In this document: positions 398 through 64,000 of the stretch, piece after piece | Position numbering within the stretch: position 1 is the stretch's first letter | How the letters are laid out: the number at the start of each line of letters is the position of its first letter | Assembly (NCBI RefSeq): GCF_036588685.1 | Contig: NC_086378.1 | Location: forward strand, 88,164,001-88,228,000 | Length of the DNA: 64,000 nucleotides | From: Mytilus trossulus | Taxonomy: Eukaryota | Reading direction: 5' to 3' | Notes under the pieces: model-generated | The model's database searches: none | What the model saw: only the letters and a program-made list of their open reading frames with translations | What the model was told of the DNA's origin: nothing | Position numbers and translations under genes: made by a program

Positions 398-3300
398 ATT
401 GCCTGGTGCCGGTTTATTTTTACCAAAACCACCATCTTTTAATAAATCCTTTACGTTTTCTGTCATGACAGGTCCTGGCCATAAACTGACAAAAGCTACA
501 TTCATTTTTCTCAACTCTACAGCGCAGTCTGCTGCCATTCTATCACACTGAAGTAAATAAAACTATAGTTAATACATAGTAGTCACAAACAATCTTATCA
601 CTCAGTGACGGATACAGGGGAGGCTACGGGGGTTGAAACTCTCTTTTTTGGACGAGCAATGCATTTGAATGAGGACTTATAGTTCAAACCTCCCTTTTCT
701 CCTGGTATGGGAGTTTAAAAATGACTAAATTTCCTTTGTCATTTTGCAGTTAATAAAAATAAAAATAAAACCATAGTTAATACAGAGAAGTCACAAACAA
801 TCTTAAGTTTCAGCGTTTCAATGCATTATTAGTGTTTATTGTGTTGACACACTGATGTCAATATTATGGAATTTTATGTGACTACATACTACAAATAAGA
901 GGCTTAGCTACATATTAATCTAGGCTTAATCCACCATTTTCTTCACAAGTAAATCCTTGTACAAGTCAGGAATTTGATAGTTGTTTTCATTCGTTTGATA
1001 TGTTTGAGCTTTTGATTTTGCCATTTGATAAGGGACTTACTATCTTGAAATTTCGTAGATTGGTTATTTATTATTTAGCAGAGTGACAATGTCCAGTTTT
1101 GAATTACATATTATAGTTTCAGACTTTGATCAGAATTGTCTTTTAATCCAATTGCTGATTTATATCATGTAGGAACAATTGTCTAAACACTGACGGGTCG
1201 GGCTTATGGAATGACAGAACAATAGCTTTTCGAAATATTGAACATCTTGCATATATAATTGTGACGAAGAGCGCATTAAAACATTCGATTGATTTGAAAC
1301 TAAAATTGAGAAAGGAAATAGGGAATGTGTCAAAGCGACAACAACCCGACCATAGACCAGACAACTAATCTATAACAACATTGATTTTGCTGTTTAATTA
1401 TTGACTTACTGCTTCTTTACCAACGCCGTAAGGTACATTAAACAGGTACCTAAGACCACCAACTGACGATACATTAACAATTAAACCAGTTTTCCTTGCT
1501 GTCATCAATTTTGCTGCGTGCACAGAACACAGATAATGGTTTCTACAGAAAAAAATAATTGTTAACGTTTATTGTTAGTAATACAAAATTGCTCGTTATA
1601 TATAAATCTTGCTTGTAAAAAATGGTAGCAAACATCTTTATTGTAATAAATCCTTATATGGTCCTATTTTAATCAAATAAGACATGAAATACAGAAAAAA
1701 TATTGACAATTTATTCAAATCATTCTATGACAATTTACAGAAGATCAGATATGGAATTGAACATGTTAAGACTTATAAAACAGCTGAGATGCAATATGTT
1801 GTACAACATTGATGACACGATTACATATTTGATTGATGTTTTTTTTATCTATCCGTACACACCTATATTGCACTACTGTTAAGGTATCAAATGCCGAACT
1901 GTTCCTTCATATAAATAGATTGAGTTTACCCACCTTAGTCCTACATTTTAAACAGTATATATCCACGTTGTGATAGGCTGTTATGGAAATATTCTTTATA
2001 AAGCACAAAGGTGTCAGTATTCACCTCATAAACTTACAAAACCTTTGAATAGACTTATTAAGAAGGGATATAATTACGATACTGTTGTCAAGTCATTAAA
2101 GATTGCATATTTTGGCGTTAATATTGAGTCACTGATAAGGTCTTTGCGTCGGAACTAAACACATTTATTCTAAAAACAGTTGTTGGCATGACACGGGTTA
2201 TGTTCTTCTCATATATGTTATGATGGTATGATACTAAACCCCTTACGGGAAGGATTGTGCCTGATGTTCATATGATGAAATCATAATCTTTCAGTCAGTT
2301 TAATTGAAGTCTGGAGCTGGCATGTCAGTTAACTGCTAGTAGTCTGTTGTTATTTATGTATTATTGTCATTTTGTTTATTTTCTTTGGTTACATCTTCTG
2401 ACATCAGACTCGGACTTCTCTTGAACTGAATTTTAATGTGCGTATTGTTATGCTTTTACTTTTCTACACTGGTTAGAGGTATAGGGGGAGGGTTGAAATC
2501 TCACAAACATGTTTAACCCCGCCGCATTTTTGCGCCTGTCCCAAGTCAGGAGCCTCTGGCCTTTGTTAGTCTTGTATTATTTAAATTTTAGTTTCTTGTG
2601 TACAATTTGGAAATTAGTATGGCGTTCATTATCACTGAACTAGTATATATTTGTTTAGGGGCCAGCTGAAGGACGCCTCCGGGTGCGGGAATTTCTCGCT
2701 ACATTGAAGACCTGTTGGTGACCTTCTGCTGTTGTGTTTTTTATTTTGGTCGGGTTGTTGTCTCTTTGACACATTCCCCGTTTCCATTCTCAATTTTATG
2801 TTGCTAGAATGGCTTACCATAGTTATCAGAGATTACCTAGACTTTACACACCTTAGTCCTACATTGTTAACAGTATCCCACGTTGTGATAGGCTGTTGCC
2901 AGAATGGCTTACCATAGTTAACAGAAATTGCATAGACTTTACACACCTTAGTCCTACATTATTTACAGTATCCCACATTGTGATAGGCTGTTATAAACAG
3001 ATTGAATTTACCCATCTTAATCCTACATTATTAACAGTATCCCACGTTGTAATAGGCTGTTGCCAGAAAGGCTTACCATAGTTATCAGAGATTACCTAGA
3101 CTTTACAAACCTTAGTCCTACATTGTTAAAAGTATCCCACGTTGTGATTGGCTGTTACCAGAATGACTTACCATAGTTAACAGAAATTGCATAGACTTTA
3201 CCCACCTTAGTCCTGCATTATTAACAGTATCCCACGTTGTGATAGGCTGTTACCAGAATGGCTTACCATAGTTAAACAGAAATTGCATAGACTTTACCCA

Positions 3301-6300
3301 CCTTAGTCCTACATTATTAACAGTATCCCACGTTGTGATAGGCTGTTGCCAGAATGGCTTACCATAGTTATCAGAGATTGCCTAGAAAAATAAATTAAAT
3401 TGATGAAAATACATAATAATGAGATTAAATTAGCAGTCACACATGTTTTATTTGTCCATAGACCATAGCAACCTACTCAAATTTTACAGAAAAAAAACAT
3501 TATCCAAAAGCTTAATAATTATTGAGGTTATATGTACTGTATTTTGTGTTTTGTTTTTTGTCTTAGATTATGATTACCATTTTATTGCTTTTTAATAAAA
3601 TGGAGTTTTTTTAACGTTGCGTCGTTTGTTTTCTCTTATTTTTGAGTGTACATTCACATTGCAATAAGACGTGTCACGGTACTTGTCTATCCCAAATACA
3701 TGTATTTGGTTTTGATGTTATATTTTTTATTCTCGTGGGATTTTGTCTGATGCTTGGTCCGTTTCTGTGTGTGTTACATTTCAGTGTTGTGTCTTTGTTC
3801 TTCTCTTATATCTAATGCGTTTCCCTCGGTTTAAGTTTGTTACCTCAATTTCGTTTTTTGTCCATGGATTTATGAGTTTTGAACAGCGGTATACTACTGT
3901 TGCCTTTATTTATATTGATAGATATTATATTATATACGTAATTAATCGTTTCTTTAATGCGAGTTTTTCAGTCCATCATATCGCTCTTTTTGGAGTGGCT
4001 TTTTTATAGTTTGATTTGTTTAATATCAATATACAGTGTTTTATATCAAATGTTTCAATAAGGCGAGACTCTAATACAGTATTTTTCTTTCTTTTGATTG
4101 ATATGGGTGAAAAATTAATATAATAAATACAAATACTCAATTAATACCAACACAAAATATAAAGTATAACAAACCAAGACAACCCATTGTTTTGTGATAA
4201 ACAAAATGTATATGTATTACCTCTATAACAAAACAATAACACATTTAACATAACTTCTTAATGGTTTTATGTTTAAACAGCTTAAGTATTTTTGTGATTT
4301 TACTTTTTAATTGACTAGGATTGTCAGTGATATTGTTGGCTTTCTTCAAAACTACCTCTATCTACCCTTTTTGATTAGAAATATGCGCCATTTTTATCAA
4401 ATTTGGAAATTTATAATAAACTATGAAATTGACTGGAACTTCAATTTGCAGATCCTCTTTCAAGAGGTAAACCCTCATTTGGAATAAGACCCCTTATTGT
4501 CAGTGATAATACATAAATAGACCCTCAAGTGTGCAAATATAGTCATTTTAGGCATGACAAATGTTTAAATGAGTGTTTTTCAGTTTGTATTCATGCACAA
4601 TCACTAGTGAGACTACACTGTTTGGGGGGGGGGGGGAATTGTCTCTTTGGGAATAATTTTGAGCTATTTTTTCAAATTGGGATTTTATCTAGGGGAAAAG
4701 CCTTTATTCTCCAGTAATTTAAGGCAAACAATATCACTGATTGTCAGTTATCCTATCAAAGGTCTGTGGTTTTCTCCGGGCACTCCGGCTTCCTCTACCA
4801 ATAAAAACTGGCAGCCACGAAATAGCCCAAAAGTGGCGTTAAACACCAAAAAACAAAACCAAATGTTTATGCAGCCACCGTGTTTTTATTTTTGAGTTCT
4901 AATAGCATTAAATATACATGCCACATGGCAGCTTATTTACGTTATGCTCTTAATTTAAGGATACAGAACGTATCAGTTACATAATAAAAATAAAAACACA
5001 TAAAATAATATTACCTCTTGTCTTACAGAGTTAAAATGAAAGACAAATCACAAGTTATTTGCAGTGCCCATACCGGAACCAAACTATGTAGTAGCGGTCG
5101 CCATGTGTATTGCCTTAAAGGCGTCATCAATACCGTATTCAAACTTAAAAAGTTCATGCAAGCAAAAATTAAATAAGAAGCTAAAACAATATGTGAACGT
5201 ACTTTTACAGCAGCATATGCATTATTGACTAGAACATCTAATTGACCATTTTGTTCTTTAGACACGCGGTTAAACAGTTCCTCTATGTCACTGTCTTTGG
5301 AATGATCACATTGGACTGGAATACATTTCCCTCCTCTGCTCTCAATCTTAAAAATAGAAAAACCAAGAATATGGGTAATTCATTCATGACGCAAAACATG
5401 CACAGCTAAAAACACATACAGAGAGTTAAGGAATAATTAACGCGTTTAGTCTTAACCGTGTAGACCACAAATTGACTGATAGTTTTGACTGAATTGTAAA
5501 CTGAGGGCTTACATAAATTGCCTGTTTCACAGATATATGTGCTATCTGATTAAATTTCAGACCCATATTAACTCGTGTGAGTAATGGGAAATCCGAGAAA
5601 AATATCTAAATTGATTGGCATATATGAAGTTATTACTTGGTTTGGTTTATCTGTTCTGGATCATATGAGTATTTGGACCATACGCGTATCGTCATGACCA
5701 TATGGGTATATAATCATATGGTAGGGGTAATTAACACTCTGTTACAGTTTACTTAAAATACTTCTAAACTCTTTATATGGTATGACCGTTCATTAAAAAG
5801 ACGCTATCATAAAGGTAATTTTGCTGTTTTATTATAATAAAAAAGATCAGCTAAATAAAAGTTATAAGTTTCACAAAGTAAATTTTACTTACTTGTCAAT
5901 TTGACAAAACTTTAATAAACACATTTTTAAACGTATGGTCATTACCGATCGATTTGTTATTACCTCTATATCACTGTACACAGCTACAAAAAGGCTAGCT
6001 TTTCACTCGCAAACAAAAGGTGTAACTGAAAAGGATCGTGCACAACCAAGACTTGCAAATGCAAAATTAGCTATGATACCGTGTGGAAGGAAATATCATC
6101 TCAAACCTACATGCAAGAATGTAATTAGCGATGAAAACTAACTATGGCATCAATAGTTAATTTTTACGTATTATTTGAACTATAGAATAATACATTGTCA
6201 TTTAACCATCATTGTTTTTAGATACAGTTTTTGTATTATTGAAACTTAAATAATGTAATTTAAAAGAAAAAAACTATATGGTCTAAATACTCATATGGTC

Positions 6301-49025: not shown

Positions 49026-52000
49026 ATGTTACAATTCATAATTATTTACACTTTCACTACTTGTTTGTGTGTATTTTCCTCACCGATATTTAAGGATAAA
49101 GTTACTTTGGAAAAGTTATCTACATTATATTTGCCGTATAGTTATGACACAGATGGAACTCCGTTATACAAGTATTCTAGTGGAGCCATTGAACAAACAA
49201 CATATGATCCTGAAAATTATATAGTATATGCTGTAGGTAAGTATAAATGCGTTTTCAAGATTGTTTTTATTTATCTTTTTATCTATTCGTTTATTAACTA
49301 AATTCCTTTTAATATCAAAAAAGGAAAAATAGTTTTACTATGACGACATTTAATGATTTTAGGGTAGCATTTCGAGAACACATACGGATTGTATACAGTA
49401 GTTACAAATATAGCAAAACAACAGGGAATTAATCTTATTGAAAGACACGATGAACCCACGATTTATTATATTTTCCTGTTAATTAACTCTTTTGTTGCCG
49501 ACATGGTTACAAGTTTTTGATTTGTCACCCAAAATCTGCTCCGAAAAACATCCGAACTTGTTCTTGTATGTACAGAAGATCACAGATATTTTTCTAATGT
49601 CGAAACTACAACCTGTACCCTTTTCTCGACAGTGAGCTTCCAAATTACTTGTTACCGGGTTTATAATAACACCAGTAACACGACGGATGCCACACGTTGG
49701 AGCAGGATTTGCTTCCCAATTTGGAGAACATGAAATCACCCATAGTTTTTGGTGGTTTCGTTTTATTCAGTCTTTAGTATTCTATGAATTTAAATTAACG
49801 GTACCAATTTTCTTGCACCAGATGCGCATTTCGACAATACATGTCTCTTCAGTGATGCTCGTGGCCAAAATATTTGAAAATCCAAAGCTTATATAAAAGA
49901 TGAAGAGCTATAATCCAAAAGGTCAAAAAAGTATAGCCAAATCCGTGAAAGGAATCGGAGCTTTGCATGAGGGAGATACATTCCTTAATTTATAATAATT
50001 TATAATATTTTGTAACAGCAAATTTTAATAACACAAAAAAATCCGTATTTTTCATGCCAGTACCGAAGTACTGGCTACTGGGGTGGTGATACCCTCGAGA
50101 GTGTTTTGTATACTGAGAGTTTGATTTAGAAAATAAAAGAGGTCAGGTTCGATAATAACGAGTTTCGCTCTTGTCGTGTAGGAACAATAGTATGGGCCCT
50201 TTATTGATTTGATAAATATGCTTCGCGTCGATTCCGATCCATATTTTTAGGTCGCTTGGTCCAAAGTCTTCTTTTTTTTTTCTTTTTTTTATCTTTACAC
50301 AATTTTCACATTTTGTTTTCTCGTTATAAAACAGAGGATTGTCACTTGAATAATGATCCTTCATTTGTTTGAAAATGACACTCTACATCGATTTCATACA
50401 TTATTTGAAGACGCTGAATTGTTATAAACGTGTTACATGGTGTTTTGTCAATTTAAAGCCCTATTTTATCCATGTTTTGTCCTGTATCGTACTACCTGAA
50501 ATCAATCTGTATTTACATACAATACAGTTCTTAAAAATATTTAAACCAAATTTTCATCGTTTACAAAATGGGTTATTGGTTCAGAGTTTAAAATACACAA
50601 CGATTTTTTTTTAAAATAAACCGGGAAAACAGGGCGTTGCTTTACTTCCACATCAAAATGATGCTGTTGAAAGCAAATCATATTAACAGATAATGATTTA
50701 AAAAATACTTATGAAAAATAAATAAATATTCAAATGTTCAATGATGATTTGTCATTTATGGTTAATTTGAACTCAGGTTACATAACATGTCGGTGCACTG
50801 ATTGTATTACAAGATATGTAAATAATATTGTGAGAAGATGTTTTTTCCATCATACATCATACTTGTAGCCAAATAAGTAATTCTACATTACTTTATTGAT
50901 GATGATAGAAATATGAAAGGTAAACGGCACCATGTAAGGAATGTTTTGATTTCTGTAAACTATATATGCCAAAATTGGGCCTAAGTGTCCGTTCTTCTTT
51001 ACACCCCTTAACCAATCGATGCTGTTAGCTATGATACATGGAAAATTTTAAAATTCCCTTTTTCCTTTAATTTTATTAAATCCGTATCTAAAAAGGAAAG
51101 AAACTGAGAATTGGGTTGGTAGGTACCACTTTAATATGACAATCTTGATAAACACAAATATTGTATTAGTATTAGTCTCGGAAGTTTACAGAATTCAGTC
51201 AGAACAATTTCAGTTGTGATTCAGAGGGGGAAAAGAACCGTTTAATCTGAAAAAAAATAATCCTTTTTTTGCACAAAATTGACCTTTCATATCTATTTTT
51301 ATATAGAATTACATCCACTCTTATTTATCAGATTTCAGGATTTACAGATTTGAAGATTACTTAAAGGTGACAAAATGTATTTATTCCCAAAATGAAAATA
51401 ACATATATATGTAATTCTTTTAGGTGGAAATATTCTGCATGTTATTGATGTAAAAAACGTCACATCTCCGAAGATCCTTCATCATATGGAGATTGATCAT
51501 GTTGATCTAACAGACATTGAATATTGTGGTGGATACATTTTCGTTTCAATGGATAATATTTTGTTTAAAGAGGAGGGGCGTGTTGTTGTATACAGAAATT
51601 TCTCCACATCAGAGCTTATGGTCGAAAAATATAACATAACAGGTAAATATTGTTCAATCGTGTTATTTGTTTGTTTTAACGATTAAAATATATGTACTTG
51701 TGGTAAGTATGGCACAGCAATAATATCAGAAAATTAGTTTGAATTAACATTATAACTTTAAAAAAGACCAGACATTTTTTTTTAAAGCAAACGCACACGT
51801 GTTTTGTTTCTTCCTTCTATTTCGATGCATTATTGTTTACAAATGTGTATACTCAGCAACAATAGAAACGCACCGTGCAGCTCTTATAATTTCTTTGGAA
51901 ACAAATTCAATTGCATATCATTTTTGAAAAAGATTGAAATTATTCAAAATGTTGTAACAACGTTTCAGAAGTCATTTATAATACAAAGTCTGTAAAAATG

Positions 52001-55000
52001 AGAATTTTTAAAATCCTTTTATTTGAAATTAAACAACATAAAAAAATATGGAATTGTATGTGACAATCATTCAAGTGGGAGGCTTAGCTAGTTGTAAAAC
52101 AGGATTAATCCACCATTTCTAAATAAGTCAAGTCTGTACCAAATGTGTGTGAAATTTGCCTGTGTAAGTTAGAAACATTTTCATATTCTAGGCTGAACTA
52201 TGATAAACGTACATTATTTTTAACGCACACTATATTTTTGCTTGTTTATTTACGTTTTAGTTGGGTCTTTACCCGATATGGTCTACCCTTCAAAAGACTG
52301 CAAAACAATACTGGTTGCTGTAGAGGCGGAGGCCTATCAAGATAATGGTAGAATTGTAGATCCAGAAGGTGGAGTCGGGATAATCAAAATTAAAAATGAC
52401 AAAGCAACGTATAAAAAGTTGGACTTCAAAGAATTCAATTCAAAGTAATTATGCAAAGTAATTTTCTATTTGTGTGCATTCTATTATTATTATTAGTGCT
52501 AGATAATACATCCTTAAACAATAATTGGTGGAAATAAATTTAAATTGAGTGTTTATTCAAGATAATTATAAATTGATTTATCGTTAATTGCTTTACGACC
52601 ATTTGCAAATAATTCATGCATATTTAGGACGATATTCCCTGTATCAAAGAATGGGGAAAACCTATATTTAGTGTGAATACAAGATAAAACTCAATTAAAC
52701 TAAAATTATTCTAAATTTAAGAAAAAATCTCGGCAAAAATAGCATGTCTTTGATGTTAATATATGATGACTGTTTTACAGATGGTCAGATTTAGAATCCA
52801 AGGGATTACGTTTTATACATAGAGTTAATAACAACAACTTCTCCAATGATGTGGAACCAGAATATATAGCATATAACAAAGATTATTCCAAAGCTTACGT
52901 TTGTCTTCAGGTAAACAGAATATTTAGCATATAACAAAGATTATACCAAAAACTTACATTTGTCTTCAGGTAACCAAAATATATAGCATATAACAAAGAC
53001 AATTCCAAAGCTTACGTTTGTCTTCATGTAACCAGAATATAAAGCATATAACAAAAAATATTTCAAAAGCTAACATGTGTCTTCAGAAAACCAGAATATA
53101 TAGATTATAACAAAGAATATTCCAAAGCTTACATCTGGCTTCAGGTAACCAGAATATATAGCACATAACAAAGATTATTCCATAGCTTACATCTGTCTTC
53201 AGGTAACCAGAATATATAGCATCAAACAAAGATTATTCCAAAGCTTACATCTGTCTTCAGGTAACCAGAATATATAGCATCAAACAAAGATTATTCCATA
53301 GCTTACATGTGTCTTCAGGTAACCAGAATATATAGCATATAACAAAGATTATTCCATAGCTTACATCTGTCTTCAGGAAACCAGAATATATAGCATATAA
53401 CAAAGATTATTCCAAAGCTTACATCTAACTTCAGGTAACCAGAATATATAGCATCAAACAAAGATTATTCCAAAGCTTACATCTGTCTTCAGGTAACCAG
53501 AATATATAGCATATAACAAAGATTATTCCATAGCTTACATGTGTCTTCAGGTAACCAGAATATATAGCATATAACAAAGATTATTCCATAGCTTACATCT
53601 GTCTTCAGGAAACCAGAATATATAGCATCAAACAAAGATTATTCCATAGCTTACATCTGTCTTCAGGTAACCAGAATATATAGCATATAACAAAGATTAT
53701 TCCAAAGCTTACATGTGTCTTCAGGTAACCAGAATATATAGCATATAACAAAGATTATTCCAAAGCTTACATGTGTTTTCAGGTAACCAGAATATATAGC
53801 ATATAACAAAGATTATTCCAAAGCTTACATCTGTCTTCAGGTAACCAGAATATATAGCATATAACAAAGATTATACCATAGCTTACATGTGTCTTCAGGT
53901 AACCAGAATATATAGCATATAACAAAGATTATTCCATAGCTTACATCTGTCTTCAGGTAACCAGAATATTTAGCATATAACAAAGATTATTCCATAGCTT
54001 ACATGTGTCTTCAGGTAACCAGAATATATAGCATATAACAAAGATTATTCCATAGCTTACATCTGTCTTCAGGTAACCAGAATATATAGCATATAACAAA
54101 GATTATTCTAAAGCTTACATCTGTCTTCAGGTAACCAGAATATATAGCATCAAACAAAGATTATTCCAAAGCTTACATGTGTCTTCAGGTAACCAGAATA
54201 TATAGCATATAACAAAGATTATTCCAAAGCTTACATCTGTCTTCAGGTAACCAGAATATATAGCATCAAACAAAGATTATTCCAAAGCTTACATGTGTTT
54301 TCAGGTAACCAGAATATATAGCACATAACAAAGATTATTCCAAAGCTTACATCTGTCTTCAGGTAACCAGAATATATAGCATATAACAAAGATTATTCCA
54401 TAGCTTACATCTGTCTTCAGGTAACCAGAATATATAGCATCAAACAAAGATTATTCCATAGCTTACATGTGTCTTCAGGTAACCAGAATATATAGCATAT
54501 AACAAAAATTATTCCATAGCTAATGTGTGTCTTCAGGTAACCAGAATATATAGCACATAACAAAGATTATTCCATAGCTTACATCTGTCTTCAGGTAACC
54601 AGAATATATAGCATATAACAAAGATTATTCCATAGCTTACATCTGTCTTCAGGTAACCAGAATATATAGCATCAAACAAAGATTATTCCATAGCTTACAT
54701 GTGTCTTCAGGTAACCAGAATATATAGCATATAACAAAAATTATTCCATAGCTAATGTGTGTCTTCAGGTAACCAGAATATATAGCACATAACAAAGATT
54801 ATTCCAAAGCTTACATCTGTCTTCAGGTAACCAGAATATATAGCATATAACAAAGATTATTCCATAGCTTACATCTGTCTTCAGGTAACCAGAATATATA
54901 GCATCAAACAAAGATTATTCCATAGCTTACATGTGTCTTCAGGTAACCAGAATATATAGCATATAACAAAAATTATTCCATAGCTAATGTGTGTCTTCAG

Positions 55001-58000
55001 GTAACCAGAATATATAGCACATAACAAAGATTATTCCATAGCTTACATCTGTCTTCAGGTAACCAGAATATATAGCATCAAACAAAGATTATTCTAAAGC
55101 TTACATCTGTCTTCAGGTAACCAGAATATATAGCACATAACAAAGATTATTCCATAGCTTACATCTGTCTTCAGGTAACCAGAATATATAGCATCAAACA
55201 AAGATTATTCCATAGCTTACATCTGTCTTCAGGTAACCAGAATATATAGCATATAACAAAGATTATTCCAAAGCTTACATCTGTCTTCAGGTAACCAGAA
55301 TATATAGCACATAACAAAGATTATTCCATAGCTTACATCTGTCTTCAGGTAACCAGAATATATAGCATCAAACAAAGATTATTCCATAGCTTACATCTGT
55401 CTTCAGGTAACCAGAATATATAGCATATAACAAAGATTATTCCAAAGCTTACATCTGTCTTCAGGTAACCAGAATATATAGCATATGACAAAGATTATTC
55501 CATAGCTTACATCTGTCTTCAGGTAACCAGAATATATAGCATATAACAAAGATTATTCCATAGCTTACATCTGTCTTCAGGAAACCAGAATATATAGCAT
55601 CAAACAAAGAATATTCCAAAGCTTACATCTGTCTTCAGGTAACCAGAATATATAGCATCAAACAAAGATTATTCCATAGCTTACATCTGTCTTCAGGTAA
55701 CCAGAATATATAGCATATAACAAAAATTATTCCATAGCTTACATCTGTCTTCAGGTAACCAGAATATATAGCATCAAACAAAGATTATTCCATAGCTTAC
55801 ATGTGTCTTCAGGTAACCAGAATATATAGCATCAAACAAAGATTATTCCAAAGCTTACATCTGTCTTCAGGTAACCAGAATATATAGCATCAAACAAAGA
55901 TTATTCCAAAGCTTACATCTGTCTTCAGGTAACCAGAATATATAGCATATGACAAAGATTATTCCATAGCTTACATCTGTCTTCAGGTAACCAGAATATA
56001 TAGCATCAAACAAAGATTATTCCAAAGCTTACATCTGTCTTCAGGTAACCAGAATATATAGCATATGACAAAGATTATTCCATAGCTTACATCTGTCTTC
56101 AGGTAACCAGAATATATAGCACATAACAAAGATTATTCCATAGCTTACATGTGTCTTCAGGTAACCAGAATATATAGCATATAACAAAGATTATTCCATA
56201 GCTTACATCTGTCTTCAGGTAACCAGAATATATAGCATATAACAAAGATTATTCTAAAGCTTACATCTGTCTTCAGGTAACCAAAATATATAGCATCAAA
56301 CAAAGATTATTCCATAGCTAATGTGTGTATTCAGGTAACCAGAAGATATAGCATATAATAAAAATTATTCCATAGCTTACATCTGTCTTCAGGTAACCAG
56401 AATATATAGCATCAAACAAAGATTATTCCATAGCTTACATCTGTCTTCAGGTAACCAGAATATATAGCATATAACAAAAATTATTCCATAGCTTACATCT
56501 GTCTTCAGGTAACCAGAATATATAGCATCAAACAAAGATTATTCCATAGCTTACATGTGTCTTCAGGTAACCAGAATATATAGCATCAAACAAAGATTAT
56601 TCCAAAGCTTACATCTGTCTTCAGGTAACCAGAATATATAGCATCAAACAAAGATTATTCCAAAGCTTACATCTGTCTTCAGGTAACCAGAATATATAGC
56701 ATATGACAAAGATTATTCCATAGCTTACATCTGTCTTCAGGTAACCAGAATATATAGCATCAAACAAAGATTATTCCAAAGCTTACATCTGTCTTCAGGT
56801 AACCAGAATATATAGCATATGACAAAGATTATTCCATAGCTTACATCTGTCTTCAGGTAACCAGAATATATAGCATCAAACAAAGATTATTCCAAAGCTT
56901 ACATCTGTCTTCAGGTAACCAGAATATATAGCATATGACAAAGATTATTCCATAGCTTACATCTGTCTTCAGGTAACCAGAATATATAGCACATAACAAA
57001 GATTATTCCATAGCTTACATGTGTCTTCAGGTAACCAGAATATATAGCATATAACAAAGATTATTCCATAGCTTACATCTGTCTTCAGGTAACCAGAATA
57101 TATAGCATATAACAAAGATTATTCTAAAGCTTACATCTGTCTTCAGGTAACCAAAATATATAGCATATAACAAAGATTATTCCAAAGCTAATGTGTGTCT
57201 TCAGGTAACCAGAATATATAGCATATAACAAAGATTATTCCAAAGCTAATGTGTGTATTCAGGTAACCAGAAGATATAGCATATAATAAAAATTATTCCA
57301 AAGCTAACATTTGTCTTCAGGTAACCAGAATATATAGCATATAACAAAGATTATTCCAAAGCTTACATTTGTTTTCAGGTTATTATTTTAATTGATTTTA
57401 TATTATACTAGTCTTATATTTACATCCCAGAATGAAAAAAGAATGTTTGCCCATTTTGATTCCTTTAAAAATGTGGGATCTAGAATAAAAAAGGGCATCG
57501 TGTCGTCATCAAACTACGACATCAACATCGAAGAGAAAACATCGAACATGGTCCAAGACATGCGTTCAATGTTGATCCAAGACATGCGTTCAATGTTGGT
57601 CCAAGACATGCGTTCAATGTTGGTCCAAGACATGCGTTCACTGTTGGTCCAAGACATGCGTTCAATGTTGGTCCAAGACATGTGTGTTCAATGTTGGTCC
57701 AAGACATGTGTTCAATGTTGGTCCAAGACATGTGTTCAATGTTGGTCCAAGACATGTGTTCAATGTTGGTCCAAGACATGCGTTAAATGTTGGTCCAAGA
57801 CATGTGTTCAATGTTGGTCTAATACTGAACGTGGTTATAAAACATGGAATTCAATGCCGGATACAAACAAAGACATAAACAGACAGAGAAAAACACTGAC
57901 AACATGTATTGCTTCAGACAGTCCCGTTAAAAAATATAAAACTGTTCAACCGTCCTTGTATTACTCAATAGAAAAACCAGATAAAAACCATAAAAAGGAA

Positions 58001-61000
58001 CAACGCACAGGAATTAAAAACCAAACACAGAAACTTTTATCAGTCATATCGGCTTTACACTTGACCTAATTTTTATCCATTGAAGTGAGCAATTTTTGAA
58101 AAGCAACTGAATATTGAATTTATTGTATTTATCAGCAATTGATTGGTGTCTGAAAATAACACAGTTTGTGAGTCAGGATTTATGCGATCTGTTTTAAGGC
58201 TTGAGCTTTCCATTGCTTCAATAAAGATTTGTAACGTTTGTTTTATGCAGGAGAATAATGCAATAGCTGTCGTGGACATTGCTACAGAAACCATAGAAGA
58301 TATATTACCATTAGGTTACAAGTCATGGGAAAAACTTATGATAGACCCAAGTGACAAAGATGGTATGTTATTGAAATTTCGTGAGGCTCTTTTCGTAAAA
58401 ACTGTAAAGCTGTTTAATTTTTTTTAAAATGTATCTTGCACACATTTTCGAATCTTTATGCACGAGTAAGTTAGTACTCAGTTTTGTGAAATATATTTTC
58501 TAACGACAAGATAAAGGATCTGCTTACCCTTCCGGATCACATGAAATCACTCCCGGTTTTGGTAAGGGTTCTTGTTGTAATTGTTCCCCTATTTATGACA
58601 TTTTGTTCACGCATTGTTGTCAATATAATGGAATTTGATGCGACTGTCGTTCAAGTGAGAGGTTTTGCGCTAAAAAAAACAGGTTCAATTCATCATTTTT
58701 TACGTTTGAAATGTCTGTTCCAAGTCAGGAATTTGTCAGTTGTTGTCCATTCATCATTTGATGAGTTGTATTATTTGATTTTGCCATTTGATTAGGGAAT
58801 TTCCACTTTGAATTTTCTTTGGAGTTAGTATTTTTGTGATTTTACATTTTGTAGAACATACAAACAAATAAAAGGCAGTCAAATTATCAAATAATGTATC
58901 ATACACTTTGTGAATTTTGAAATCTAGTTCCGAACTTAAAGATTCAATTATCGGTATTCTTCATGCGGATTTTTTTCTCAATGATTAATTTTACACGGAT
59001 TTCTAATCTCTTCATTCTTGTAAAACGTCTTCAAGTTTTGATAAAACATGTCAAATCTTCGATTTTTAAATTTGAAACGAAACTTAGTAAAGATTTTTGT
59101 ATTCTTTAGGAGGTATAAATATGAGATCCTGGCCAATCTATGGCATGTACCAACCTGATACTATCCACGTGATATATGTTGCGGGAAAAGGTTACCTAGT
59201 GACCTCTAATGAAGGTGATTTTAAGGATTACTCAGACTTGGGAGGATTTAATGAAGAAGAACGTGTTCGAGATGTCATCTTATCAGGTATTAAACAATTA
59301 AAAAATCACTTTATCATGCGTTTGAAGCCTATCCCGGAGATACCTCTATCAGAAACATTCGAAGTCGAACAATTAAATGCAAAGGGACTTCAAGAATCAA
59401 AACAGTTGAAGGGTTATCAGAACAAAAAGGACACACATGATCAACTTTACCGTACCGATTATTATTATAAACACTGATGATTAGAATTTAGTTAATAAGA
59501 AATTATGAGGAGTTAGTGGTTTTATTTTATATCATGTTCAAGAATATTGGACATTTCCAAGCGAGATAACCCAATTTGTTTAAGAAGTTTTTATAAAAAC
59601 TCTGATAGTTTTAAATTGCCTACCGAGATATAATATTATTATGGCACATAGTATCTCATATGTGTATTTAAATTAAGTCTTTATAATTTTGGTAAATTGA
59701 CATAACCTCGGTTTTGAATGTATCTATGTTAATGTTCTTAACATGCTTTGTTTAAGGGCCATGAATATTAACTATTTAATTGTTCTATCTTTTTTCAGAA
59801 AATTCTTCAATTGTCAAATGGGCTGCTGACAACAACCTTTCTACGACTATCCAAGATGATAACATGCTTGGTAAAATGTTTTAACTTATAAAGGAATAAA
59901 GGAATGGTTTGCATGAAACATACATTAGCTTGTGACAAGTCACGTTCGCTTATGCTCCAATCGTGGAAAAGAGAACTGGAAAGTGGCTGTGACGAGTGTT
60001 ACATATCTGTTGTAGTCTATGACACGTACGTTTGTTCATGATGGCATTGGTCAAAATTTAGAAATAACTTTGCAATATATTTCCCTTGGTTGAGAAGCCT
60101 CGAGCTCTGTGTTGACAGTAATAAATGTTCAGAGAAATCATGATAGGAGGTGTAATCTGAAATATCGTATCGATCGGGAGATTTAAAGGTTTTTTTTTAA
60201 TTTTAGGTCGGTTAAAAATAACCAATATGAATGGTAGAAATAAAAATGGAACATATGACGAACTATATGCGTTTGGGGGAAGAGGTTTCTCCATACGCAA
60301 ACTAGAAACAATGGAGCTCGTGTTCGATAGTGGAGACCAGTTTGAAAAGCTTCACCAACAATACATACCTCTGTTGTTTAACAATAATGGCGGGAAGGAA
60401 AGTAAAACAGTCAAACAGACATTTGACACTAGGTCAGACGATAAGGTATATATAGAATAACCTTTCATTTTCTCGCAATATAAATGTTATTTGTACAAGG
60501 CTAAGAAACTGGCAGAAAGCGAGGCTGTGTATTCCGTAGATATCATGAAAGACATTTGTTTTAACAATTTTATAGAAGCTACTTTTACCATAAGCCACCA
60601 CCCAGATGTTCGGTCTTACAACAATTTTACACATGATTCATAGTTATCGGACGTTTTATTCATAAGGTATTCGGGCATGGGCAATATGTTACGTGGTCCA
60701 AATCAGAATGTCTCCCGTTTGATGGAAATCGCTAAGATGAAAAACATTTTAACAACGCATTATAAAATATTAAAACACCACCTCAAGCGTCCAACGTGCT
60801 TTTCTCAAAGTAAAAGCAAAGGATTATGCAAACCCTTATATTATCAAAAGGGACCAAAAATATTAGCAAAATCCATCAAAAGTCAACTTTTTCTTAGGAT
60901 GTTGAAACATTTAAAACAAATTTGTATTTTTGATGGGGTTCGTGTTGTTTATTCTTTAGTTTTCTATGTTGTGTCATGTGTACTATTGTTTTTCTGTTTG

Positions 61001-62837
61001 TCTTTTTCATTTTTAGCCATGGCGTTGTCAGTTTGTTTTAGATTTACGAGTTTGACTGTCCCTTTGGTATCTTTCGTCCCTCTTTTTGTATTCATAGACG
61101 GACAATTTTGAAAATGTCTGTTTTGAAGCACTAACTACTGAGCTTACGATACCATTGATAGACCACCAGCGGCGGTATCGACTTAGTGCTGTAAACAATG
61201 AACATGATTAGTATTGATATATTTCAGATACTTTAGTGAAATAAAAGCAGATATCAACTACAATGGACCTCCGAACGTATCTATTTCCAAATAATTTAAA
61301 AAAAAAATCATTTATAATACAAGTAACGCTTTGGTCTTAACTCCTCGAGTACTTATACACGCTTAGCGTTATCGATTCAAGCGATTCTTATATATTGCAA
61401 CGTTCGTCTCAAAATACCTGTACCAATTTCATCTGACAACGAAAAAAAATTTACTTGTTTTATATATGATATACTTTACTGACATTATTTTGAAGGGTCT
61501 CGAGAGTGAAAGTCTAGCAGTTGCTCATATTGGGAATACAGTTTTATTATTCATTGGAAACGAACGACCTGGTACTATATGTATTTATAAGATAACAGGA
61601 GATGCCTCTAGGCCAGAATTTCAAAGTATATGGAACGGTGTTGGAGAAACCGATAACAAATGGGAAGAGCTTTATGAGAGAAGGATGTTAAGTGGAATAG
61701 ATCCCGAGGACTTAAGGTTGGTATTAAAACGAGACTGATATAGCAACAACAAAAAAACTAGTAAAGCGAGCTACTGTTTTGTTTTAGAAATGAACCAAAC
61801 TAATTCTTGTAGAAAATTGGCTCCAAAAAGCGTTCTTGATTTACTTAGTAGAACGGTCGTTCTCCACTAAAAAGCCCACTAGAATTCATAAATTTCTTAT
61901 AAAACTATTTAAAAACAACTTAAAGAAAAGAATTTTCACTATCCAATCTATCCCCTTGGTCTGGATGTCTTTCATCTTACAGAAGTTTTTTTTTTTTTTT
62001 AAAGTTTCGGAATATAGTTTCGAATTCATTCTGTAGCATGAAAACGTTTTGTTTTTTAATTTATTCGTTAATTTTAGATAATTGTTTGGAAACAAAGATT
62101 ACAACTCCTCCAGACAAAAGGTAGACATTAGGGTAATTCGGCTATGCTTTCGATGGTCTATTCTGGTCATACAGCTCCTCCCGTGTTCGGGAATTTACAC
62201 ATTCTATGTTTAGGTTATAATATTGTTCTAAATGAATAATGATACTATTTCAGATACATTCCCGCTGAACAAAGTCCAAATAAGCAGCATATATTAACAG
62301 CTGCTGGCACTGTTAGTGGAACCTTTTCCATGTTTACAATAAAAGGTATTAATGGTGAGTATTTATAAAGACTACGTATATCACATGAAATTTAAGGTTA
62401 AATAGACAGATAGCAATCAAACGACACAAAAAATACGTAAGACATCAACACACAGTCACCAACACTCGAAAAGAGTGTACTTTAAATATGTCGATCATTT
62501 CCCGATTTTAATTTTAAAATTGTCGAAGAAGTACTGAAGATAACCAATGAGTAAATATCTTTCATAGATATGAATGGCTAATTAGCCCACCTGATCTAAT
62601 TCTTTATTTTTTGTTGAAAAAGACAGGATGATAGTTCATCTGTATTTATGTTTTCAACTATTCCAGCGTCAAAACATACAAGAGCATAGAAGATATATTA
62701 ATTACTAGTATCAAACTCAATTCAAACACGTATCCTCTACATTTGATAATAGATAAATTAATTATATGGATATTTATTGTTTGTAGAACACAATTCGGGA
62801 GTGGCGCCCACGGATAAGGCAGGCAGCTTAAATATAG
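49026..62837 (+). CDS. msp130-like mesenchyme-specific cell-surface glycoprotein (bacterial alkaline phosphatase / choice-of-anchor-I related); 3' end probably beyond the window
   Basis: Exons 49026-49236 (signal peptide), 51424-51642, 52261-52444, 52781-52910, 58251-58362, 59110-59286, 59799-59870, 60207-60445, 61496-61716, 62254-62354 and probably 62787-62837, all phase-compatible. Motifs GSLPDM, DPEGGV, EPEYI, LQENNAIAVVD, DPSDKDGG, GMYQPD, TSNEGD, AFGGRGFSI, FDSGD, FDTRSDDKGLESE, GNERPG, DPEDL. Confidence 0.88.
49815..49858 (-). ncRNA. Intact type I minimal hammerhead ribozyme (second retrozyme-like family, about 49792-50098)
   Basis: GCAUCA-CUGAAGA-GACA(UGUAU)UGUC-GAAA-UGCGCA-UC-UGGUGC: full catalytic core, three stems, palindromic stem III. 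Confidence 0.8.
52853..57380 (+). repeat. 58-bp minisatellite (about 77 intronic copies) derived from the 3' end of msp130-like exon 4 plus its GT donor
   Basis: Unit GTAACCAGAATATATAGCATATAACAAAGATTATTCCA(A/T)AGCTTACATCTGTCTTCAG. Span 52911-57378 is 4468 nt, about 77 units. The unit matches exon codons EPEYIAYNKDYSKAYVCLQ. Confidence 0.96.
57548..57820 (+). repeat. 24-bp minisatellite (about 11 copies)
   Basis: GGTCCAAGACATG(C/T)GTTCAATGTT in tandem, with one 2-nt insertion mid-array. Confidence 0.92.
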
Positions 62838-64000
62838 GTAGGTTTGCCGTTTTTGAAAAAATATTCAATTTGCAGCTTTGGCATGTAAACCTATAAATCT
62901 TTATGTAATATCATATTTGTATAAGAGGTGGAGAGAAAAATATTGAACAAAAATAACGAACTCCAATGTAAATTCAAAATTAAAGAGGGAAGTCCATAAA
63001 AGCCGACAAAATCTAACATTAAGCTTTATTAATAATTGTTTAAAAAGTAAAATCACAAAAATGCTGAACTTAGAGGAAAATCTATTCGGAAAGTCCATAA
63101 TCACATGCCAAAATCAAATAACAAAACGCATCAAAAACAAATGGACAAGAACTTAAATACTTTGCAAACTGCATTAGATGATCATGTTCTGATAAGTTTA
63201 TGAAGCTTATATTTTGTAAAAACTGTGTCCAATATTATTTCAAAATAGAACACACGATTGGTAGTGACAAAACATTGACCAAATGCTGTTTGACACAGTT
63301 GAAATTTTGGAAAATGGATAGTTTAACACAATGTGAAGCGGTAATATCTATGACAAAACAGATTGATTAATTATTATGTTTTACACAATAAAGGCAACAG
63401 TAGTACACCGCTGTTCTAAAACCATAAATCGATTGATAGAAAGCAAACCCGGGTTACAAACTAGAACCGAATGCAACACATCAACCAAAAGAATAAACAA
63501 CAGAACAACACAAACACTGAAGTACAACAAAACAAACGCCAACAAAATACATAGAGACGAAGTATTTGATAACAAATGCAATATTTTTGACCTGGTACAG
63601 GGACCTAACATAATTGTTTGATTCGAATATAAAAAAAAATAGTCTAGAAATATGAAGAATTGTAAATACAATTGAGAACGGAAATTATGAATGTGCCAAA
63701 GCGACAACAACCCGACCATAGAGCAGACAACAGCCGAAGGCCTCCAATGGGTCTATATGTCAGTATAACACAAGAGGGACGAAAGATACCAAAGGGACAG
63801 TCAAACTCATAAATCTAAAACAAACTGACAACGCCAGTGCTAAAAATGAAAAAGACAAACAGAAAAACAATAGTACACATGACACAACATAGAAAACTAA
63901 AGAATAAACAACACGAACCCCATCAAAAACTAGGGGTGATCTCAGGTGCTCCGGAAGGGTAAGCAGATCCTGCTCCACATGCGGCACCCGTCGTGTTGCT

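What the first reader, a model, noticed from the sequence alone, without database searches (positions are those of the whole stretch)
52853..57380. 4.5-kb array of about 77 back-to-back potential mini-introns made from an exon end
Seen: the last 56 nt of coding exon 4 plus GT are amplified, so nearly every junction reads ...CTTACATCTGTCTTCAG|GTAACC. Each 58-nt unit starts with GT, has a branch-like CTTAC/CTAAT and a pyrimidine-rich tract, and ends in CAG abutting the next GT. That is the geometry of recursive splice sites and of the tandem-duplication model of intron gain. Only a few junctions are mutated. Reading through any unit hits TAA within 8 codons. The unique intron resumes at CAG|GTTATT (57379), probably the ancestral donor, so the working donor (52911, GTAAAC) may have been created by the duplication. 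Inference: the cell must pick 1 of more than 70 donors or remove units stepwise. Caveat: the branch-to-AG distance (about 14 nt) is short.
Basis: partly seen in the sequence, partly recalled or inferred. Interest (0 to 1): 0.85.

Follow-up and report, generated by a model that had tools for sequence, protein, structure and literature searches.

The report
Splice-donor minisatellite in a mussel gene intron
The last 56 bases of an exon plus the GT of its splice signal have been copied 77 times, head to tail, into the following intron of a Mytilus trossulus shell-protein-like gene; the repeat is real and large, but it is the same kind as the one in human F7 intron 7, and nothing found here shows that the extra copies are used or kept by selection.

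Summary
A 58-bp repeat (78 copies, 93% matches) runs from the tail of coding exon 4 (52855) to 57378/57380. It gives 77 intronic units, of which 72 are intact GT...AG.

The gene is a Mytilus trossulus choice-of-anchor-I / MSP130-like gene (XP_063441781/2). Both annotated isoforms, Pfam and eight homologues join 52910 directly to 58251.

A tandem paralogue 27 kb downstream has one copy only. Its 380-bp intron sits at the same position and starts almost like the sequence after the array. So the array came from a junction-spanning duplication of this gene's own exon end. 57379 is the ancestral donor, and the working donor at 52911 was made by the duplication. No intron was gained.

The array is unique in the 1.3-Gb genome. 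It has higher-order repeats and diverged edges, as expected from unequal exchange. The CAG|GT columns are no better conserved than other columns (p = 1).

The closest known case is the human F7 IVS7 minisatellite, where only the most upstream donor is used.

The scan has noted this kind before in at least eight other genes of this genome. I verified two arrays in symplekin.

The parts
52781..52910 (+). Coding exon 4 of the choice-of-anchor-I / MSP130-like gene. It encodes ...WSDLESKGLRFIHRVNNNNFSNDVEPEYIAYNKDYSKAYVCLQ.
   Evidence: Exact match to residues 206-248 of XP_063441782.1 (P0121), with acceptor ttttacag|A. Pfam PF22494 profile positions 170-207.
52855..52912 (+). Progenitor copy of the repeat: the last 56 nt of exon 4 plus the GT of the donor.
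   Evidence: It differs from the array consensus at only 3 of 58 positions. It shares 3 diagnostic bases with the array against the paralogue.
52911..52916 (+). Working 5' splice site, CAG|GTAAAC. Bases +3..+6 derive from the start of the duplicated exon segment.
   Evidence: Both RefSeq isoforms read ...AYVCLQ|ENNAIAVV.... Homologues end here.
52911..57378 (+). 77 intronic repeat units (4468 bp). Each is GTAACC...CTTAC...TCTGTCTTCAG, and 72 are intact GT...AG. The array holds 33 sequence types, a 4-unit higher-order repeat repeated three times (about 54305-55000), and duplicated blocks of 8 and 7 units (55639/56393 and 55871/56741).
57379..58250 (+). Unique remainder of intron 4 (872 bp). It begins with the ancestral donor GTTATT and ends with the acceptor ttgttttatgcag.
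   Evidence: The first about 19 nt match the start of the paralogue's 380-bp intron. The stretch is single-copy in the genome.
57549..57819 (+). A separate 24-bp x 11 minisatellite in the same intron. It is unrelated to the 58-bp unit.
58251..58361 (+). Coding exon 5 (ENNAIAVVDIATETIEDILPLGYKSWEKLMIDPSDKD).
   Evidence: Pfam PF22494 profile positions 208-233, directly continuing from exon 4.

Best explanation
This is a locus-specific intronic minisatellite of the splice-junction type.

Origin. A 58-bp tandem duplication spanned the exon 4 / intron 4 boundary of a Mytilus trossulus MSP130-like gene, covering 56 nt of exon plus GT. That placed a new donor, CAG|GTAACC (now GTAAAC), directly after the exon and pushed the ancestral donor, CAG|GTTATT, downstream.

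Why it was tolerated. The most upstream donor is the one paired with the acceptor at 58250, so the mRNA did not change and the duplication was neutral. The copies then multiplied by unequal exchange or replication slippage to 77 units. The intron grew from a few hundred bases to 5.3 kb.

Present state. The other 72 donors are silent pseudo-sites that leave with the intron. Any transcript that used one would carry a TAA eight codons after exon 4 and would be expected to be degraded.

Shown: the array, its origin from the exon, the ancestral donor, the annotated 52910->58251 junction, and the lack of extra conservation at the junctions. Inferred: that downstream donors are silent (by analogy with human F7) and that the array is neutral.
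For: - Structure of the array.
Both isoforms join exon 4 to exon 5 at 52910|58251 and differ only by one Gly at the exon 5/6 acceptor.
- Pfam profile positions 207|208 fall exactly on that junction, and eight full-length homologues align across it without a gap.
- The paralogue 27 kb downstream has one copy, a 380-bp intron at the same position, and an intron start like the post-array sequence.
- The array shares 3 diagnostic bases with its own exon, not with the paralogue.
- It is unique in the genome, so it is not a transposon or a dispersed satellite.
- Higher-order repeats are present, and edge units carry 6-7 mismatches against a core mean of 2.1. This is the usual mark of unequal exchange.
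- Junction columns are not conserved above background.
- The other donors of this gene are GTAAAT, GTAATT, GTATTA, GTAAAA, GTATAT and so on, so GTAACC is of ordinary local strength and position must decide the choice.
- Symplekin in the same genome tolerates at least 19 perfect CAG|GTAAGT copies downstream of its authentic donor.
Against: - No RNA reads could be examined.
- The F7 result comes from mammalian cells with 5-9 copies, not from a mollusc with 73 donors.
- With equal-strength sites, some in-vitro work favours the site nearest the acceptor (own knowledge). That rule would predict trouble here.
- Neutrality is assumed, not shown. Copy-number polymorphism and orthologous alleles could not be inspected.
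Confidence: 0.7

Rival explanations
1. Stepwise or recursive removal. Each ...TCTTCAG|GTAACC junction would act as a zero-length-exon ratchet point. Blocks of units would be spliced out one after another, each step regenerating CAG|GTAACC, until the acceptor at 58250 is reached.
For: The geometry is right: 71 of 76 internal junctions read AG|GT, with a pyrimidine-rich tail and a CTTAC 13 nt upstream. All routes give the same mRNA, so nothing selects against it. The RNA has no structure that would hide the sites (z = +1.06).
Against: Junction bases are no more conserved than other columns, and GT is lost in 4 units. A single unit is only 58 nt, with branch-to-AG of 13 nt, against 335-872+ nt for the gene's other introns. 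The intron is 5.3 kb, far shorter than the introns where recursive splicing is known (own knowledge). No RNA evidence is available. Within a perfect repeat, short-read deletions of 58n nt cannot be told from reverse-transcriptase template switching or from array-length alleles.
Confidence: 0.12
2. The array is kept because it does something. It might be a cluster of about 73 U1-binding sites that protects an AT-rich intron from premature cleavage and polyadenylation. It might instead be a length-variable dial on expression, through leakage to decoy donors and nonsense-mediated decay.
For: Donor-anchored arrays recur in this genome (earlier notes; two verified in symplekin), and they are among the largest arrays in those regions. 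Every decoy donor leads to a premature stop.
Against: There is no excess conservation of the splice-signal columns: mean variant types are 2.09 against 1.97, p = 0.93. The paralogue works with a 380-bp intron and no array. Recurrence is also explained by a tolerance filter, in which only duplications that leave the first donor in charge survive in genes.
Confidence: 0.08
3. Assembly artefact: the copy number or the whole array was produced by mis-assembly of a short repeat.
For: No reads could be laid on the region. Long near-identical arrays are hard to assemble.
Against: There are 33 distinct unit types in an ordered higher-order pattern, with diverged edges and clean unique flanks. The contig is 91 Mb, chromosome scale. 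The same architecture is seen in other genes.
Confidence: 0.03

Closest known systems
Human F7 intron 7 (IVS7) 37-bp VNTR minisatellite (Borensztajn et al. 2006, PMC1557585)
   Same: Both are tandem arrays whose first monomer spans the exon-intron boundary, so the authentic donor is followed by a row of (near-)identical pseudo-donors. Use of most later donors gives a premature stop. The productive mRNA uses the most upstream site.
   Different: There are 77 units of 58 bp here, against 5-9 of 37 bp in F7. Here the unit takes only GT from the intron, so the working donor's +3..+6 is exon sequence and each junction is a full AG|GT composite. The silence of the downstream donors was shown by 50 constructs for F7 and is only inferred here. 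This case is a mollusc, not a mammal.
Intron creation by tandem duplication of an AGGT-containing segment (Rogers model; Hellsten et al. 2011, PMC3265369; potato RdRp, PMC4974935)
   Same: A duplicated segment carrying AG|GT supplies a donor in the first copy and an acceptor-like AG in the second. The original mRNA can be restored by splicing.
   Different: The intron already existed here, since the paralogue has it at the same position. The duplication enlarged an intron and multiplied its donor; it did not create a new intron. Splicing between adjacent copies is not shown.
Recursive (ratchet-point) splice sites of long Drosophila and vertebrate introns
   Same: Both have a juxtaposed 3' and 5' splice-site motif, (Y)nCAG|GTAA.., that would regenerate a donor after the first step.
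   Different: Known sites are single, conserved and lie in very long introns. Here there are 71 unconserved copies in a 5.3-kb intron, and no intermediate has been observed.
Other splice-donor minisatellites of the same genome (symplekin, checked here; others noted by the scan: LRR receptors, DROSHA, SUPT3H, MON2, survivin, RBMX2)
   Same: Each amplifies the end of an exon plus its 5' splice site into the next intron. The symplekin arrays are 49 bp x 24 and 93 bp x at least 86.
   Different: The symplekin units include 31 and 18 nt of intron, against 2 nt here, so the right-hand breakpoint is not fixed relative to the splice site.

Membership tests
Splice-junction (F7 IVS7-type) minisatellite | Intronic tandem array whose first monomer spans the exon-intron boundary | tested here: met
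   The array starts at 52855 inside exon 4 and runs across the donor at 52911.
Splice-junction (F7 IVS7-type) minisatellite | The authentic donor is followed by repeated pseudo-donors of (near-)identical sequence | tested here: met
   There are 72 copies of CAG|GTAACC after CAG|GTAAAC.
Splice-junction (F7 IVS7-type) minisatellite | Only the most upstream donor is used; the pseudo-sites are silent | not testable with these tools
   The RefSeq isoforms and homology agree with 52910|58251.
Splice-junction (F7 IVS7-type) minisatellite | Copy number varies between alleles (VNTR) | not testable with these tools
Recursive splice sites | Juxtaposed acceptor and donor motif, AG|GT, with a pyrimidine tract | tested here: met
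   71 of 76 internal junctions.
Recursive splice sites | The motif is conserved above the neighbouring intron sequence | tested here: not met
   Non-consensus counts in the junction columns are 0, 0, 1 | 1, 4 out of 77. Fisher p = 1 and Mann-Whitney p = 1 against the other columns.
Recursive splice sites | Intermediates observed (lariats, sawtooth nascent coverage, junction reads) | not testable with these tools
Intron gain by tandem duplication | Duplicated segment contains AGGT | tested here: met
   The unit ends in CAG|GT.
Intron gain by tandem duplication | The intron is absent at that position in relatives that lack the duplication | tested here: not met
   The array-free paralogue has a 380-bp intron at the identical codon position.
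Dispersed satellite or transposon-borne repeat | The same unit occurs at other loci of the genome | tested here: not met
   All matches lie in this array, apart from the single exon copy of the paralogue.

The most novel reading that the evidence does not exclude
Donor-anchored minisatellites may be systematically favoured in Mytilus genes, either by a mutational process tied to 5' splice sites or by selection for U1-binding arrays. Arrays like this one, with 71 intact AG|GT junctions, may also be taken out in several recursive steps rather than in one. Either result would make mussels a natural system for studying 5' splice-site choice among dozens of identical sites.
Probability: 0.12. Interest if true: 0.7.

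Novelty: new member of a known kind. Interest (0 to 1): 0.38.

Why it matters
As a single locus it is an ordinary, probably neutral by-product of tandem duplication, and the gene's product is unaffected. Its value is as a natural experiment. Seventy-three near-equal donors stand in a row in front of one acceptor, in an expressed gene, with an array-free paralogue next door as an internal control. Together with the other donor-anchored arrays in this genome, it could test whether the rule that the most upstream donor wins, established on human F7 constructs, holds across animals. It could also show why junction-spanning duplications on the donor side are tolerated and can grow to kilobases.

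Tried and rejected
Only the orthologues' proteins were seen; they read AYICLQ|ENN.
- The 48-aa minus-strand ORF of the array, searched against the protein collection as a proxy for the array in other assemblies: no candidate. This says nothing either way.
- Known RNA families in 52000-58600: none.
- RNA structure that could mask the pseudo-donors: none; four units fold worse than shuffles (z = +1.06).
- The idea that the authentic donor is always stronger than its copies. It looked promising: GTAAAC against GTAACC here, GTACGT against GTACAT and GTAAGT against GTAAAT in symplekin. I rejected it because 19 of 75 copies in the symplekin 93-bp array keep the perfect GTAAGT.
- Transposon origin: rejected, because the unit and the rest of the intron are single-locus.
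- Zhuo et al. 2007 (PNAS, introns from tandem arrays) is not held in the library. It is cited only by title, through PMC3488318.
- The spliced coding sequence was never joined.
- The first global MAFFT alignment of the two introns was uninformative and was replaced by BLAST and direct comparison.
Full report
**1. Is it there?** Yes. Tandem Repeats Finder gives one array at 52855-57380 with period 58, 78.0 copies, 93% matches and no indels. Cutting at the junctions gives the exon copy (52855-52910) followed by 77 intronic units at 52911-57378. Seventy-five units are 58 nt and two near the 5' edge are 59 nt. Of the 77 units, 73 begin with GT, 76 end with AG and 72 have both. Seventy-one of the 76 internal junctions read AG|GT. 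The donor hexamer is GTAACC 72 times and GTAAAC once, in the first unit. Reading on from exon 4 meets TAA at the eighth codon. After the last unit the sequence continues GTTATTATTTTAATTG....

**2. The gene.** The + strand carries a choice-of-anchor-I (PF22494) gene of the MSP130 / gigasin-3a type.
- Exon 4 matches profile positions 170-207 and exon 5 matches positions 208-233, so the two exons are contiguous in the domain.
- Eight full-length homologues from other molluscs align exon by exon and cross from 52910 to 58251 without a gap.
- The protein collection holds the product of this very gene: XP_063441782.1 and XP_063441781.1, 'mesenchyme-specific cell surface glycoprotein-like' isoforms X2 and X1 of Mytilus trossulus. 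They lie on a contig of 91,445,414 bases, the length of the window's own contig.
- Residues 1-572 match the window exactly, exon by exon.
- Both isoforms read ...AYVCLQ|ENNAIAVV... and differ only by one glycine at the acceptor of the next intron.

The productive splice is therefore 52910 to 58251, across a 5340-bp intron of which 4468 bp are array.

**3. Where the array came from.** The unit occurs nowhere else in the 1.3-Gb assembly, except as a single copy in the same exon of a tandem paralogue 27 kb downstream. The paralogue is collinear with this gene, exon for exon. Its intron at the same codon position is only 380 bp and starts GTATTTATTTTAATTGATT. The sequence after the array in the window starts GTTATTATTTTAATTGATT. 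The array consensus agrees with the window's own exon at three positions where the paralogue differs.

So the history is as follows. A 58-bp duplication took 56 nt of exon plus the GT of the old donor. It occurred in this gene after the paralogues diverged. It set a new donor directly behind the exon and moved the old donor (57379) downstream.

The new donor's bases +3 to +6 are the first bases of the duplicated exon piece (AACC, now AAAC in the first unit). By the known U1 pairing scheme, CAG|GTAA.. gives seven contiguous pairs, more than the old CAG|GTTATT. That comparison is inference from established knowledge, not a measurement.

At one position the exon now has G (Val codon GTT), while the array, the paralogue and the M. 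edulis and M. galloprovincialis orthologues (Ile) point to A. This suggests the array is older than that substitution. A recurrent CpG change cannot be excluded.

**4. How it grew.** The 77 units fall into 33 sequence types. A four-unit pattern is repeated three times, and blocks of 8 and 7 units recur 13 and 15 units further on. The first four and last four units carry 6-7 (3 in the last unit) differences from the consensus, against a mean of 2.1 in the core. Higher-order periodicity with old edges is the usual signature of unequal exchange or slippage within an array. This reading is inference.

**5.
- The five junction columns C, A, G | G, T carry 0, 0, 1 | 1, 4 non-consensus units out of 77.
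- Three of these five columns vary, against 26 of the other 53 columns (Fisher p = 1).
- Counting distinct unit types gives Mann-Whitney p = 1.
- A wider set of columns (donor +1..+6, branch, tract, AG) gives p = 0.93.

There is no sign of purifying selection on the internal sites. Variants spread by duplication, so the counts are not independent events and the test is weak. It still gives no support for function.

**6. Could the units be spliced?** By local standards the sites look usable. The gene's other donors include GTAAAT, GTAATT, GTATTA, GTAAAA and GTATAT, and the unit tail TCTGTCTTCAG is a fair pyrimidine tract. On the other hand, a single unit is 58 nt with the CTTAC adenosine 13 nt from the AG, while the gene's other introns are hundreds of bases long. 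The array RNA has no stable fold (z = +1.06) and matches no Rfam family. Stepwise removal is therefore possible on paper but has no positive evidence. Within a perfect repeat, short reads could not distinguish it from template switching or from length alleles.

**7. What is known.** The closest precedent is the human F7 gene. [quoted passage not shown] Fifty constructs showed that the pseudo-sites are functional but never compete. [quoted passage not shown]

This explains why a junction-spanning duplication on the donor side is harmless at birth and can then expand. The tandem-duplication model of intron gain (PMC3265369, PMC4974935) shares the AG|GT geometry. It does not apply here, because the intron was already present.

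**8. Recurrence in this genome.** Earlier notes of this scan list the same architecture in a leucine-rich-repeat receptor cluster, symplekin, DROSHA, SUPT3H, MON2, survivin and RBMX2 of the same genome. One follow-up named the F7 precedent. I checked symplekin myself.
- The gene lies on contig 3.
- One exon ending ...RLITKQ is followed by 24 copies of a 49-bp unit, made of its last 18 nt plus 31 nt of intron.
- The next exon, ending ...NTFTAHQ, is followed by at least 86 copies of a 93-bp unit (75 nt of exon plus 18 nt of intron). This array runs off the fetched piece after 8 kb.
- Nineteen of the 75 copies I could score keep the perfect CAG|GTAAGT of the authentic site. Position, not strength, must therefore decide the choice in that gene too.

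The right-hand breakpoints lie at +2, +18 and +31, so they are not fixed relative to the splice site. This argues for ordinary duplications filtered by tolerance rather than a mechanism tied to the cleavage site. Whether such arrays are truly enriched needs a genome-wide count against the annotation, which I could not run.

**9. What could not be done.** A protein-level proxy search for the array found nothing and is uninformative.

**10. Verdict.** The origin story, including the ancestral donor at 57379 and the duplication-made working donor, is well supported. The readings as intron gain and as recursive mini-introns are not supported, though recursion is not excluded. The most likely account is a neutral F7-type splice-donor minisatellite, large for its kind, in which the first donor is used and the rest are silent (confidence about 0.7). 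It is a new member of a known kind. Its interest is moderate, and comes mainly from the copy number, the neighbouring array-free control and the recurrence of the type in this mussel genome.

Noticed in passing
G000:C3:91878454-91879630 and 91879987 to beyond 91888000 (L032:454-1630 and L032:1987-10000): Two consecutive symplekin exons are each followed by an array of their own end plus donor: 49 bp x 24 and 93 bp x at least 86 (more than 8 kb, running off the fetched piece). 19 of 75 scored copies of the second array keep a perfect CAG|GTAAGT.
   Followed up: partly
window 57549-57819: A second, unrelated minisatellite (24 bp x 11, 94% matches) lies in the same intron. The whole 872-bp post-array part of the intron is single-copy in the genome and more than twice as long as the paralogue's entire intron.
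   Followed up: partly
G000:C6:88234500-88250500 (L023/L025/L024): A collinear tandem paralogue of the MSP130-like gene lies 27 kb downstream. Most exons are 79-87% identical at DNA level, but exon 4 is 91.5% and exon 5 97.9% identical. This could be a strongly constrained segment or local gene conversion.
   Followed up: no
window 59100-59115: A tandem acceptor (ctttag|gag) at the start of exon 6 accounts for RefSeq isoforms X1 and X2, which differ by one glycine.
   Followed up: partly
window 60677-61111 (+) and 63760-63987 (-); also L024: ORF fragments with a shared hydrophobic stretch (...DGVRVVYSLVFYVVSCVLLFFCLSFSFLA...) recur in introns of both paralogues; 63772-64000 is 97.8% identical to a stretch near the paralogue. 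This is probably a dispersed repeat element.
   Followed up: no
window 2799-3386: A 95-bp tandem array (about 6 copies in two overlapping Tandem Repeats Finder rows) lies far upstream of the gene. I did not examine it for any relation to an exon.
   Followed up: no
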